Part shown: positions 133 through 7,778 of the stretch, piece after piece | Position numbering within the stretch: the first letter of the stretch is position 1 | Layout: every line of letters begins with the position of its first letter | Assembly: GCF_000143415.4 (NCBI RefSeq) | Contig: NW_003314655.1 | Coordinates: forward strand, 1-7,783 | Source of the DNA: Selaginella moellendorffii | Lineage: Eukaryota; Plantae; Lycopodiophyta | Length of the DNA stretch: 7,783 bases | Direction of reading: 5' to 3' | Notes under the pieces: model-generated | What the model saw: the letters and a program-made list of their open reading frames with translations, nothing else | The model's database searches: none | What the model was told of the DNA's origin: nothing | Made by a program: the position numbers and the translations under genes

Positions 133-303
133 GACCCTAGCCCTAGCCACGTGTCACGGGGACCGCCGGTCAAACTCATCGCCGCCGGTCAACCACCCCA
201 CCGCACCGACGGCCGCGATTGCCCCAACTTAAGCCCCACTTAATCGCACTAAGCGCTCCCCATAATCGCCCTTTGCTAGTTAAACCCCCTCCCCCACAAA
301 CCC

Positions 304-314
304 AATAAATTTAA
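304..314 (+). promoter_or_regulatory. TATA-like element upstream of the small RNA (present in every unit)
   Basis: AATAAATTTAA, 11 consecutive A/T in a GC-rich unit, beginning about 30 nt upstream of the predicted start, where TBP/TFIIIB normally binds. Confidence 0.5.
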
Positions 315-346
315 CCGACACGAAATATGTAACGGAGAGGTGGTAG

Positions 347-357
347 AGGCCTAGTGG
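347..357 (+). promoter_or_regulatory. Pol III A box (present in every unit)
   Basis: AGGCCTAGTGG versus consensus TGGCNNAGTGG, one mismatch. It lies about 10-13 nt inside the predicted 5' end. Confidence 0.7.
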
Positions 358-401
358 CAGAGACCCCCAATCTAAAAACAAGTCCACTCAAATAGGTCCC
401 T

Positions 402-412
402 GGGTCGAGACC
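402..412 (+). promoter_or_regulatory. Pol III B box (present in every unit)
   Basis: GGGTCGAGACC versus consensus GGTTCGANNCC, one mismatch. It starts 55 nt after the A box start. Confidence 0.7.
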
Positions 413-428
413 CACCCGGAGCCACCTC

Positions 429-433
429 TTTTT
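429..433 (+). terminator. Pol III oligo-T terminator (present in every unit)
   Basis: TTTTT directly at the 3' strand of the terminal stem. It is the only T5 run I see on the + strand of the unit. Confidence 0.7.
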
Positions 434-1081: not shown

Positions 1082-1381
1082 AAACCCATTGCAATGGTGT
1101 GGGACGGTGGAGCAACGAAATCGGGATCCGTTTCTGTGGAAACGGGTGGACTCACGCAAGCTTTCCAACGGTTCAAGTCCCACCGCAAACCGAGCCATGG
1201 ATGTTGCCCACTCGCTCGAAAACCCAGCGTCAAACCCATCGCAATGGTGCGGGCCGGTGGAGCGACGAAATCCAGATCCGTTTCTGTGGAAACGGGTGGA
1301 CTCACGCAAGCTTTCCAACGGTTCAAGTCCCACCGCAAACCGAGCCATGGATCTTGCCCACTCGCGCAAAACCCATATCCA
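1082..1381 (+). repeat. Two tandem 150-bp subrepeats (A 1082-1231, B 1232-1381)
   Basis: 78-bp identical core (1125-1202 = 1275-1352) with diverged flanks. Each contains hairpin CCGTTTC-TGTG-GAAACGG and GGTTCAAGTCC. Confidence 0.97.
1170..1180 (+). promoter_or_regulatory. Spacer B-box motif (also 1320-1330 and in every subrepeat)
   Basis: GGTTCAAGTCC is a perfect match to GGTTCRANNCC. Function is inferred only. Confidence 0.45.
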
Positions 1382-1582
1382 GACCCTAGCCCTAGCCACG
1401 TGTCACGGGGACCGCCGGTCAAACTCATCGCCGCCGGTCAACCACCCCACCGCACCGACGGCCGCGATTGCCCCAACTTAAGCCCCACTTAATCGCACTA
1501 AGCGCTCCCCATAATCGCCCTTTGCTAGTTAAACCCCCTCCCCCACAAACCCAATAAATTTAACCGACACGAAATATGTAAC

Positions 1583-1682
1583 GGAGAGGTGGTAGAGGCC
1601 TAGTGGCAGAGACCCCCAATCTAAAAACAAGTCCACTCAAATAGGTCCCTGGGTCGAGACCCACCCGGAGCCACCTCTTTTT
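1583..1682 (+). ncRNA. Candidate Pol III vault-RNA-like small RNA, copy 2
   Basis: Identical to copy 1 (offset 1249). Confidence 0.75.
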
Positions 1683-2330
1683 GGCACAATTTAAGTAGTG
1701 GAGGGAATATTCTCTCGGAATAATGGAGAATGCGGGCGTTGGGGGCCGTTTTCTCGCGAACCGTGCGTGCGTTTCGCGTGGGACTGGCGCCGTTGGGTTC
1801 GTGTTCGTGGGGGGCACCCTCCCCAGTGACAGGAGGTGCAAGGACCTCTCGGGGTTTGCCCCTTTCGCCCAGCGGTCGCAAGGGTGTGCCGTTTTCGACA
1901 AGGCACGCACGGTGCCAGCATGGCATGGGGGGCCCAGCCAATTCGGATCGATGCCCTCGACGCGGGCTTCGCCACGGCGCTCCTGGGGTCGCGTTCCAGT
2001 GCAGGCCCGAGCGCCAATGCGGTGTTTTCCTCGAGAGTGAGATGCACTCCCGGCGGCAGCCCACGCATGGGGCCCGCGATCCGTTGGCACGGCCGCGACC
2101 GGGGCGTCACGCCGGCCGGCCCCGTTGGTGCCGGAGTGCGGGCGGGCACACGGATCGCCACGTGGGACGCATCTTCTTCCGTGGGAAAAACCACAAAAGC
2201 AGGCGCCCAGGACATGGAAAAATGTACTTGGCCACATGGGCCAGTTGCGCGCACCGCCCCAGTTGCTCCCATGTGCCCAAGGGCGAAAGGGGGCCCACGG
2301 TCCACGAGATATGGCAACGGGAACAGCACA

Positions 2331-2630
2331 AAACCCATTGCAATGGTGTGGGACGGTGGAGCAACGAAATCGGGATCCGTTTCTGTGGAAACGGGTGGAC
2401 TCACGCAAGCTTTCCAACGGTTCAAGTCCCACCGCAAACCGAGCCATGGATGTTGCCCACTCGCTCGAAAACCCAGCGTCAAACCCATCGCAATGGTGCG
2501 GGCCGGTGGAGCGACGAAATCCAGATCCGTTTCTGTGGAAACGGGTGGACTCACGCAAGCTTTCCAACGGTTCAAGTCCCACCGCAAACCGAGCCATGGA
2601 TCTTGCCCACTCGCGCAAAACCCATATCCA
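2331..2630 (+). repeat. Two tandem 150-bp subrepeats (A+B)
   Basis: Copy of 1082-1381 at offset 1249. Confidence 0.97.
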
Positions 2631-2831
2631 GACCCTAGCCCTAGCCACGTGTCACGGGGACCGCCGGTCAAACTCATCGCTGCCGGTCAACCACCCCACC
2701 GCACCGACGGCCGCGATTGCCCCAACTTAAGCCCCACTTAATCGCACTAAGCGCTCCCCATAATCGCCCTTTGCTAGTTAAACCCCCTCCCCCACAAACC
2801 CAATAAATTTAACCGACACGAAATATGTAAC

Positions 2832-2931
2832 GGAGAGGTGGTAGAGGCCTAGTGGCAGAGACCCCCAATCTAAAAACAAGTCCACTCAAATAGGTCCCTG
2901 GGTCGAGACCCACCCGGAGCCACCTCTTTTT
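2832..2931 (+). ncRNA. Candidate Pol III vault-RNA-like small RNA, copy 3
   Basis: Identical to copy 1 (offset 2498). Confidence 0.75.
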
Positions 2932-4080: not shown

Positions 4081-4180
4081 GGAGAGGTGGTAGAGGCCTA
4101 GTGGCAGAGACCCCCAATCTAAAAACAAGTCCACTCAAATAGGTCCCTGGGTCGAGACCCACCCGGAGCCACCTCTTTTT
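4081..4180 (+). ncRNA. Candidate Pol III vault-RNA-like small RNA, copy 4
   Basis: Identical to copy 1 (offset 3747). Confidence 0.75.
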
Positions 4181-5329: not shown

Positions 5330-5429
5330 GGAGAGGTGGTAGAGGCCTAGTGGCAGAGACCCCCAATCTAAAAACAAGTCCACTCAAATAGGTCCCTGGG
5401 TCGAGACCCACCCGGAGCCACCTCTTTTT
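5330..5429 (+). ncRNA. Candidate Pol III vault-RNA-like small RNA, copy 5
   Basis: Identical to copy 1 (offset 4996). Confidence 0.75.
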
Positions 5430-6578: not shown

Positions 6579-6678
6579 GGAGAGGTGGTAGAGGCCTAGT
6601 GGCAGAGACCCCCAATCTAAAAACAAGTCCACTCAAATAGGTCCCTGGGTCGAGACCCACCCGGAGCCACCTCTTTTT
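6579..6678 (+). ncRNA. Candidate Pol III vault-RNA-like small RNA, copy 6
   Basis: Identical to copy 1 (offset 6245). Confidence 0.75.
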
Positions 6679-7326
6679 GGCACAATTTAAGTAGTGGAGG
6701 GAATATTCTCTCGGAATAATGGAGAATGCGGGCGTTGGGGGCCGTTTTCTCGCGAACCGTGCGTGCGTTTCGCGTGGGACTGGCGCCGTTGGGTTCGTGT
6801 TCGTGGGGGGCACCCTCCCCAGTGACAGGAGGTGCAAGGACCTCTCGGGGTTTGCCCCTTTCGCCCAGCGGTCGCAAGGGTGTGCCGTTTTCGACAAGGC
6901 ACGCACGGTGCCAGCATGGCATGGGGGGCCCAGCCAATTCGGATCGATGCCCTCGACGCGGGCTTCGCCACGGCGCTCCTGGGGTCGCGTTCCAGTGCAG
7001 GCCCGAGCGCCAGTGCGGTGTTTTCCTCGAGAGTGAGATGCACTCCCGGCGCAAGCCCACGCATGGGGCCCGCGATCCGTTGGCACGGCCGCGACCGGGG
7101 CGTCACGCCGGCCGGCCCCGTTGGTACCGGAGTACGGGCGGGCACACGGATCGCCACGTGGGACGCATCTTCCTCCGTGGGAAAAACCACAAAAGCAGGC
7201 GCCCAGGACATGGAAAAATGTACTTGGCCACATGGGCCAGTTGCGCGCACCGCCCCAGTTGCTCCCATGTGCCCAAGGGCGAAAGGGGGCCCACGGTCCA
7301 CGAGATATGGCAACGGGAACAGCACA

Positions 7327-7476
7327 AAACCCATTGCAATGGTGTGGGACGGTGGAGCAACGAAATCGGGATCCGTTTCTGTGGAAACGGGTGGACTCAC
7401 GCAAGCTTTCCAACGGTTCAAGTCCCACCGCAAACCGAGCCATGGATCTTGCCCACTCGCGCAAAACCCATATCCA
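7327..7476 (+). repeat. Single chimeric A/B 150-bp subrepeat
   Basis: The 5' flank has A-type bases (CCATTGCAATGGTGTGGGAC, GCAACGAAATCGGG) and the 3' flank has B-type bases (GGATCTTG, CGCGCAAAACCCATAT). Confidence 0.93.
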
Positions 7477-7677
7477 GACCCTAGCCCTAGCCACGTGTCA
7501 CGGGGACCGCCGGTCAAACTCATCGCCGCCGGTCAACCACCCCACCGCACCGACGGCCGCGATTGCCCCAACTTAAGCCCCACTTAATCGCACTAAGCGC
7601 TCCCCATAATCGCCCTTTGCTAGTTAAACCCCCTCCCCCACAAACCCAATAAATTTAACCGACACGAAATATGTAAC

Positions 7678-7778
7678 GGAGAGGTGGTAGAGGCCTAGTG
7701 GCAGAGACCCCCAATCTAAAAACAAGTCCACTCAAATAGGTACCTGGGTCGAGACCCACCACGGAGCCACCTCTTTTT
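7678..7778 (+). ncRNA. Candidate Pol III vault-RNA-like small RNA, copy 7 (two variants)
   Basis: As copy 1 but with C>A at 7742 and an extra A at 7761. Terminal stem, A box, B box and T5 are intact. The variants may be end-of-sequence errors. Confidence 0.7.

What the first reader, a model, noticed from the sequence alone, without database searches (positions are those of the whole stretch)
334..433. Vault-RNA-like Pol III small RNA gene hidden in each repeat unit
Seen in sequence: a ~100-nt segment with a TATA-like element near -30, an A box, a B box, a T5 terminator and 5'/3' ends forming a 10-11 bp stem (GAGAGGTGGT/GCCACCTCTT). The stem continues as a panhandle (CC350-351/GG418-419, GTGG/CCAC, GACCC/GGGTC) around an A-rich central loop (about 367-401). 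Established: vault RNAs are ~90-140 nt Pol III transcripts with a terminal stem, internal A and B boxes and a variable central loop. As I recall human vtRNAs, the A-box end AGCGG pairs with CCGC following GUUCGAGAC. Here the equivalents are AGUGG and CCAC following GGUCGAGAC, which looks like a compensatory C-G to U-A change. Inference: this is a divergent vault RNA or an undescribed Pol III RNA with the same architecture. It cannot be a tRNA because the B box does not sit in a 5-bp T stem abutting the acceptor stem.
Basis: partly seen in the sequence, partly recalled or inferred. Interest (0 to 1): 0.85.

Follow-up and report, generated by a model that had tools for sequence, protein, structure and literature searches.

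The report
Orphan Pol III cassette in satellite
Each 1.25-kb unit of a spikemoss tandem repeat carries a ~97-base segment with all the DNA signals of a small RNA polymerase III gene. It is not a vault RNA or a tRNA, and no transcript has been seen.

Summary
Upstream lies an AT-rich TATA-like stretch (304-314). Inside are an A box (347-357, 8 of 9 consensus positions) and a B box (402-412, 8 of 10). The only T5 run on that strand of the unit ends the segment (429-433), and a 10-bp stem joins the two ends. This arrangement occurred in 11 of 5000 shuffles of the unit, and in none together with the stem.

The vault reading fails. Rfam gives no Vault, Y RNA or tRNA match, even at E up to 10 on 116 bases. 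ARAGORN finds no tRNA. Published work says vaults are probably absent from plants. The "compensatory pair" compares sequences whose homology is not established.

Six copies are identical, so the window cannot show conservation. The one divergent copy has two changes in 100 bases, no fewer per base than the spacer. Three RNA-seq runs gave zero reads, but without a positive control.

My best reading is an orphan, tRNA-gene-type Pol III unit inside a satellite, possibly silent. The closest architectural parallel is the tandemly repeated mouse 4.5SH RNA genes.

The scan had already reached the same verdict on other pieces of this genome (s1-380483, s1-361215).

The parts
304..314 (+). AT-rich, TATA-like element at about -30 to -20 from the presumed start (G334)
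   Evidence: Read directly. Positions -35 to -20 are 81% A+T against 39% for the unit. The GC profile dips here.
334..433 (+). Cassette copy 1: the presumed ~96-100-nt Pol III transcription unit
   Evidence: The A box + B box + T run arrangement occurred in 11 of 5000 shuffles, and in none with the stem as well. No Rfam or ARAGORN match.
347..357 (+). A box, 8 of 9 specified consensus positions; the position equivalent to tRNA U8 is A
   Evidence: found at 1596 in copy 2, which is 347 in copy 1.
402..412 (+). B box, 8 of 10 consensus positions, starting 55 nt after the A box starts
   Evidence: found at 1651 in copy 2, which is 402 in copy 1.
429..433 (+). T5 run, the presumed Pol III terminator; it overlaps the 3' strand of the terminal stem
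   Evidence: It is the only T5 run on the + strand of the unit.
335..344 (+). 5' strand of the 10-bp terminal stem, pairing with 421-430
   Evidence: 10 of 10 pairs. Present in every low-energy fold.
421..430 (+). 3' strand of the terminal stem
1583..1682 (+). Cassette copy 2, identical to copy 1
2832..2931 (+). Cassette copy 3, identical
4081..4180 (+). Cassette copy 4, identical
5330..5429 (+). Cassette copy 5, identical
6579..6678 (+). Cassette copy 6, identical
7678..7778 (+). Cassette copy 7, a variant with C>A at 7742 and an extra A at 7761

Best explanation
The segment is a genuine tRNA-gene-type (type 2) RNA polymerase III transcription unit. It sits once per unit in a homogenised 1249-bp satellite of a spikemoss, which earlier scan notes name as Selaginella moellendorffii.

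Inferred mechanism:
1. TFIIIC binds the B box (402-412) and the A box (347-357).
2. TFIIIC places TFIIIB on the AT-rich stretch at about -30 (304-314).
3. Pol III starts near G334 and stops in the T5 run (429-433).
4. The product is a 96-100-nt RNA ending in U's, whose ends are closed by a 10-bp stem.

The layout looks like a badly decayed long-variable-arm tRNA gene. Its terminal stem is extended by about 5 bp on each side: 5 of 7 acceptor-like pairs, 3 of 4 D-stem pairs, no anticodon arm, and an off-register T arm. It belongs to no described RNA family.

The motifs and their better-than-chance arrangement are shown. Factor binding, transcription and any function are inferred. I lean to a unit that can be transcribed but is mostly silenced, like clustered tRNA genes in Arabidopsis.
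For: -
- The arrangement occurred in 11 of 5000 shuffles, and in none of 5000 together with the stem.
- It ends at the only T5 run on its strand of the unit.
- Positions -35 to -20 are 81% A+T in a unit that is 39% A+T. Land-plant tRNA genes have a conserved AT-rich region at -20 to -35 (PMC13578239).
- The terminal stem has 10 of 10 pairs.
- The A-to-B spacing of 55 nt, and the 35 nt between the D-like and T-like arms, fit a long-variable-arm tRNA gene (plus general knowledge of tRNA numbering).
- There is precedent for tandemly repeated type 2 Pol III small-RNA genes with a TATA-like box at -31/-24: mouse 4.5SH (PMC10137851).
- Tandem tRNA gene clusters in Arabidopsis are largely silenced (PMC7544208, PMC12308677).
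Against: - No transcript was seen. Three RNA-seq runs under the same species label gave 0 reads from about 9.2 million records each. There was no positive control for the organism in those runs. From the library label I take them to be standard mRNA libraries, which would capture a ~97-nt Pol III RNA poorly.
- No RNA-labelled assembly holds the sequence, except one run whose RNA label is only a guess.
- Folding energy is ordinary (z = -1.62) and two different folds are nearly equal in energy.
- There is no comparative evidence. Six copies are identical. The one divergent copy has 2 changes in 100 nt, against 5 substitutions in about 1000 nt of neighbouring spacer, so there is no sign of extra constraint.
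- No relatives were found in metagenome contigs.
- Both boxes are imperfect, and the shuffle criteria were chosen after the fact.
Confidence: 0.55

Rival explanations
1. It is a dead relic. A tRNA or tRNA-like gene was captured when the satellite formed, and array homogenisation now carries it along. No stable RNA is made. Any present role is at the DNA level, for example TFIIIC binding at the B boxes or, per earlier scan notes, serving as the landing site of site-specific LINEs.
For: - Zero RNA-seq reads.
- The cloverleaf is destroyed: no anticodon arm, and a T stem with 2 of 5 pairs in register.
- The divergent copy takes two hits in 100 nt.
- Each unit carries two more B-box-like sites without an A box or terminator.
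- Clustered tRNA genes in plants are silenced.
- Earlier notes s1-361215 and s1-361229 report LINE insertions at one site in the cassette. I did not test this here.
Against: - Every signal needed for Pol III (AT-rich -30 region, A box, B box, T5) is still intact and correctly spaced in all seven copies, including the divergent one.
- The 10-bp terminal stem ending exactly at the terminator is not expected of a decaying tRNA gene.
- The RNA-seq result has no positive control.
Confidence: 0.3
2. It is a vault RNA: the RNA component of vault particles, bound by TEP1 inside an MVP shell.
For: - It has type 2 Pol III signals, is about 100 nt long, and has a terminal stem with a variable A-rich centre.
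This rests on memory, not on a test.
Against: - No match to the Rfam Vault model at its gathering score, or at E up to 10 on 1321 or 116 bases.
- Vaults are probably missing from plants (PMC3762200).
- As far as I know, vault RNA genes occur in a few copies, not in a 1.25-kb satellite.
- The panhandle is only one of two near-equal folds.
Confidence: 0.02
3. The motifs are a chance coincidence in a satellite with no Pol III history.
For: - Both boxes are imperfect (8/9 and 8/10).
- Folding z-score is -1.62.
- The feature was picked out by eye from a very large scan, so some chance hits are expected genome-wide.
Against: - The full arrangement occurred in 11 of 5000 shuffles, and in none with the stem.
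- An AT-rich island lies exactly at -35 to -20, and the only T5 run on the strand lies exactly at the end of the stem.
Confidence: 0.1
4. It is a working but highly unusual tRNA, for example a selenocysteine-like tRNA, an intron-bearing tRNA or a suppressor.
For: - A long terminal stem, a short T-like stem (4 pairs with a 6-nt loop) and an upstream TATA-like box recall tRNA-Sec genes. This comparison is from my own knowledge.
- The A box lies in a D-arm-like hairpin with 3 of 4 pairs.
Against: - ARAGORN finds nothing at default settings, with or without introns. At relaxed thresholds it returns only scattered low-quality calls, none on the + strand of the cassette.
- No tRNA or tRNA-Sec match in Rfam at E up to 10.
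- No helix can form an anticodon arm in 365-399.
- Five nt separate the T arm from the terminal stem.
Confidence: 0.02

Closest known systems
Mouse 4.5SH RNA genes (PMC10137851)
   Same: A Pol III RNA gene with internal A and B boxes, a TATA-like box at about -31/-24 and a T-run terminator. It is present in hundreds of copies, each inside one unit of a long tandem repeat. From my own knowledge, the RNA is about 94 nt.
   Different: 4.5SH derives from the B1 SINE and 7SL RNA, sits in a 4-5-kb unit in rodents, and is known to be expressed and functional. Here the unit is 1.25 kb, the source looks tRNA-like, there is no sequence relation, and expression is unknown.
Arabidopsis tandem tRNA gene clusters, such as the Ser/Tyr/Tyr cluster (PMC7544208, PMC12308677)
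   Same: Plant tandem repeats carrying Pol III genes with tRNA-type promoters. They lie in heterochromatin and are silent in most tissues.
   Different: Those units hold canonical, recognisable tRNA genes. This cassette fails every tRNA detector and lacks an anticodon arm.
Vault RNAs (Rfam Vault family)
   Same: About 100 nt, type 2 Pol III signals, a terminal stem and a variable central region.
   Different: No match to the family model. The host lineage probably lacks vaults. The gene organisation (a satellite) is unlike the few-copy vault RNA loci.
SINE-derived or tRNA-derived satellites (for example PMC10702118; Xenopus satellite I from my own knowledge)
   Same: Tandem repeats that contain a Pol III promoter module inherited from a small-RNA-derived element.
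   Different: No dispersed SINE copies, target-site duplications or 3' tails can be seen in this window. Here a T5 run closes a compact, stem-bounded unit.

Membership tests
Vault RNA | Sequence and structure match to the Rfam Vault covariance model | tested here: not met
   No match at the gathering score, nor at E up to 10 on 1321 bases or 116 bases.
Vault RNA | Internal A and B boxes plus an oligo-T terminator | tested here: met
   A box 8/9, B box 8/10, T5. This feature is shared with many unrelated Pol III genes.
Vault RNA | Panhandle formed by the 5' and 3' ends around a variable centre, supported by covariation | tested here: inconclusive
   The terminal stem has 10 of 10 pairs. The inner panhandle is one of two near-equal folds (-31.4 against -32.7 kcal/mol). 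The copies are identical, so covariation cannot be tested.
Vault RNA | Host encodes MVP and TEP1, and the RNA sits in vault particles | not testable with these tools
   No tool supplied an MVP query and the genome is not searchable here. The literature says vaults are probably missing from plants (PMC3762200).
tRNA | Cloverleaf recognised by tRNA detectors | tested here: not met
   ARAGORN finds 0 genes at default settings, with or without introns. No tRNA or tRNA-Sec match in Rfam at E up to 10.
tRNA | A 5-bp T stem with a 7-nt loop in B-box register, abutting a 7-bp acceptor stem; an anticodon arm | tested here: not met
   T stem 2 of 5 pairs in register. Five nt lie between it and the terminal stem. 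The acceptor equivalent has 5 of 7 pairs. No helix forms in 365-399.
Type 2 Pol III small-RNA gene (generic class, 4.5SH-like tandem genes) | A and B boxes 30-60 nt apart, an AT-rich or TATA-like region near -30, and T4 or longer just after the structured RNA | tested here: met
   The arrangement occurred in 11 of 5000 shuffles, and in none with the stem.
Type 2 Pol III small-RNA gene (generic class, 4.5SH-like tandem genes) | A transcript of the predicted size and ends | tested here: inconclusive
   0 reads in three RNA-seq runs, with no positive control and with libraries that I judge, from their label, unsuited to small RNAs.
Y RNA | Match to the Rfam Y RNA model | tested here: not met
   No match at E up to 10.
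SINE | Dispersed copies with target-site duplications and a 3' tail | not tested

The most novel reading that the evidence does not exclude
The array is the gene cluster of a lycophyte-specific, abundant ~97-nt Pol III RNA of a new family. It would be encoded by a homogenised tandem array, as 4.5SH RNA is in mice, with a cellular role still to be found. If the earlier scan notes hold, that conserved multicopy gene would also be the target of site-specific LINEs.
Probability: 0.15. Interest if true: 0.6.

Novelty: new member of a known kind. Interest (0 to 1): 0.33.

Why it matters
If transcribed, this would be a plant small RNA with no described family, made from many identical genes. That gene organisation is otherwise known for 5S RNA, for some tRNA clusters and for rodent 4.5SH RNA. 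If silent, it is an example of a satellite built around a decayed Pol III gene. That would bear on how TFIIIC sites and site-specific retrotransposons relate to repeats. Either way, the vault RNA claim, which would have been surprising in a plant, does not hold.

Tried and rejected
- **Rfam at all thresholds**. The only hits were on the opposite strand and at chance level: a trypanosomatid H/ACA snoRNA at 16 bits (E 0.45) and two microRNA models. Ribozyme families gave nothing either.
- **ARAGORN with introns and relaxed thresholds**. It returned only scattered low-score calls, including one on the minus strand of the cassette. I rejected these as noise.
- **Plant snRNA upstream element (TCCCACATCG).** The window has 12 matches with 2 mismatches, against 9.5 expected. 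None lies upstream of the cassette on its strand. A type 3 promoter is therefore unsupported.
- **Are the two 150-bp subrepeats decayed paralogues of the cassette?** A colinear alignment exists but is marginal (z = 2.2 for one subrepeat, 0.8 for the other). Not shown.
- **Coding potential.** ORFs of 300-362 aa occur in four frames with no Pfam match. This is a composition artefact of a GC-rich spacer.
- **Relatives elsewhere.** Two pattern scans of metagenome contigs found nothing. No plant genome collection is on hand.
- **Expression.** The single reads call covered 1099 letters, within the operators' limit, and gave no RNA reads.
- **Literature.** Searches for this satellite, for vault proteins in Selaginella and for site-specific LINEs in Selaginella found nothing specific.

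Full report
**What the window is.** The 7783 bases are 6.2 units of a tandem repeat with a 1249-bp period. Units 1-5 differ at 3 sites in all. The sixth unit (6579-7677) has 5 substitutions and lacks one copy of a 150-bp internal duplication. Earlier notes of this scan place the window in a spikemoss and name it Selaginella moellendorffii. I did not verify the species myself.

**Checking the observation.**
- The stretch at -35 to -20 from G334 is 81% A+T in a unit that is 39% A+T. It contains AATAAATTTAA at 304-314.
- The A box in proper register is 347-357, matching 8 of 9 specified consensus positions. The B box is 402-412, matching 8 of 10. Their starts are 55 nt apart.
- The T5 run at 429-433 is the only one on the + strand of the whole unit.
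- Positions 335-344 pair with 421-430 in 10 of 10 pairs, with a G-U pair at each end.
That fold scores -28.2 kcal/mol as drawn and -31.4 when completed.
- RNAfold prefers a Y shape at -32.7: the terminal stem, a long interrupted hairpin 348-357/384-398, and a 6-bp hairpin 400-405/414-419. The two folds are near-equal alternatives.
- Overall folding energy is not unusual (z = -1.62).
- In 5000 dinucleotide shuffles of one unit, an A box + B box + T-run arrangement of this quality appeared 11 times on either strand. It never appeared together with a terminal stem of 8 bp or more.
- I set those criteria after seeing the sequence, and the feature was selected from a huge scan. The figure argues against chance within this unit but is not a genome-wide probability.

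**What it is not.**
- Rfam gives nothing at gathering thresholds over the window.
- At E up to 10 on one unit and on 116 bases around the cassette, there is no Vault, Y RNA, tRNA, tRNA-Sec, snRNA, SRP or ribozyme match on the + strand. The only matches are chance-level ones on the opposite strand.
- ARAGORN finds no tRNA, with or without introns. Relaxed thresholds give only noise.
- Read in tRNA numbering from the two boxes, the cassette has these parts:
  - a D-arm-like hairpin with 3 of 4 pairs;
  - an acceptor equivalent with 5 of 7 pairs, extended outward by 5 more pairs;
  - 35 nt between the D-like and T-like arms, the length of a long-variable-arm tRNA, but with no helix that could be an anticodon arm;
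  - a T stem with only 2 of 5 pairs in register, separated from the terminal stem by 5 nt.
- So it is tRNA-gene-like in promoter layout and overall topology, but it is not a tRNA. A tRNA origin is my inference, not a demonstrated fact.

**The vault claim.** The defining test available here, the family covariance model, is not met. [quoted passage not shown] A 2025 paper repeats this (PMC12547018). I could not search the genome for MVP or TEP1. Without established homology, a G-C in one and an A-U in the other is not covariation. Most of the shared B-box string is the general B-box consensus.

**Conservation and expression.**
- Six copies are identical, so the window cannot show selective constraint.
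- The seventh copy (7678-7778) has C>A at 7742 and an extra A at 7761. That is 2 changes in 100 nt, against 5 substitutions in about 1000 nt of the adjoining spacer. The cassette is therefore not visibly better conserved.
With two events this means little.
- The run search listed no holder on record as RNA.
- Three raw RNA-seq runs with the same species label gave 0 reads on 1232-2330, from about 9.2 million records each. One small run of unknown type holds the repeat as contigs.
- There was no positive control for the organism in those RNA runs. From the library label I take them to be standard mRNA libraries, which would capture a 97-nt Pol III RNA poorly. The result is therefore inconclusive.
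- Two pattern scans of metagenome contigs found no relatives.

**Best explanation.** This is an orphan type 2 Pol III unit.
- *Inferred steps:* TFIIIC binds the B and A boxes. TFIIIB is placed on the AT-rich -30 stretch. Pol III starts near 334 and terminates in the T5 run. The product is a 96-100-nt RNA with a U-rich 3' end and a stem-closed structure.
- *Fit with plant tRNA genes:* land-plant tRNA genes have a conserved AT-rich region at -20 to -35 and poly(T) terminators (PMC13578239), which matches what is seen here.
- *Closest architectural parallel:* the mouse 4.5SH RNA gene family. It has hundreds of copies, each in one unit of a 4-5-kb tandem repeat, with A and B boxes, a TATA-like box at -31/-24 and a T-run terminator (PMC10137851).
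- *Closest plant parallel:* the tandem tRNA gene clusters of Arabidopsis, which are heterochromatic and silent in most tissues (PMC7544208, PMC12308677).
- *Main rival:* the cassette may be a silent relic carried by array homogenisation.

| Reading | Probability |
|---|---|
| Real Pol III-type unit that is, or can be, transcribed | about 0.55 |
| Silent relic carried along by the array | about 0.30 |
| Chance coincidence | about 0.10 |
| Vault RNA | about 0.02 |
| Working but unusual tRNA | about 0.02 |

**Other checks.**
- The plant snRNA upstream element is not present upstream of the cassette.
- ORFs of 300-362 aa in four frames have no Pfam match and reflect GC richness.
- Each 150-bp subrepeat carries a 9-of-10 B-box match on the same strand as the cassette, but no A box of comparable quality and no T run.
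- A colinear alignment between the cassette and the subrepeats is only marginal.

**Relation to earlier scan notes.** The same cassette had already been followed up on other pieces of this genome with the same verdict: an orphan Pol III unit, not a vault RNA or tRNA, with no transcript seen (s1-380483, s1-361215). Two notes add that L1/Tx1-type LINEs insert at one site in the cassette (s1-361215, s1-361229). This window holds no such insertion, so I could not test that. I treat it only as a lead.

**Verdict.** The vault interpretation is not supported. The generic reading of an undescribed Pol III-type unit is plausible but unproven. Interest is moderate to low until an RNA is shown.

Noticed in passing
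window 1082-1231 and 1232-1381 (and the same places in each unit): A 150-bp internal tandem duplication, 93% alike. Each half carries a 9-of-10 B-box match (GGTTCAAGTCC, e.g. at 1320 and 2419) on the same strand as the cassette, plus a 7-bp hairpin with a TGTG loop. Neither half has a good A box or a T run. These could be bare TFIIIC-type sites or decayed sister cassettes. Alignment to the cassette is only marginal (z = 2.2 and 0.8).
   Followed up: partly
window 6579-7677: The last full unit is 1099 bp because one 150-bp subrepeat is missing, leaving a hybrid copy. It also carries 5 substitutions. This looks like unequal crossing-over near the edge of a homogenised block.
   Followed up: partly
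Two events are too few to choose between the folds.
   Followed up: partly
window 1560-2677, both strands: ORFs of 300-362 aa in four different frames span the GC-rich spacer. None has a Pfam match. This is most likely a lack of stop codons in 65-85% GC sequence.
   Followed up: yes
window 162-204 (and each unit): A 19-bp mini-repeat (about 2.3 copies, 75% matches) lies in the C-rich stretch upstream of the cassette. Nearby at 136-149 is a doubled CCCTAG motif. Neither is explained.
   Followed up: no
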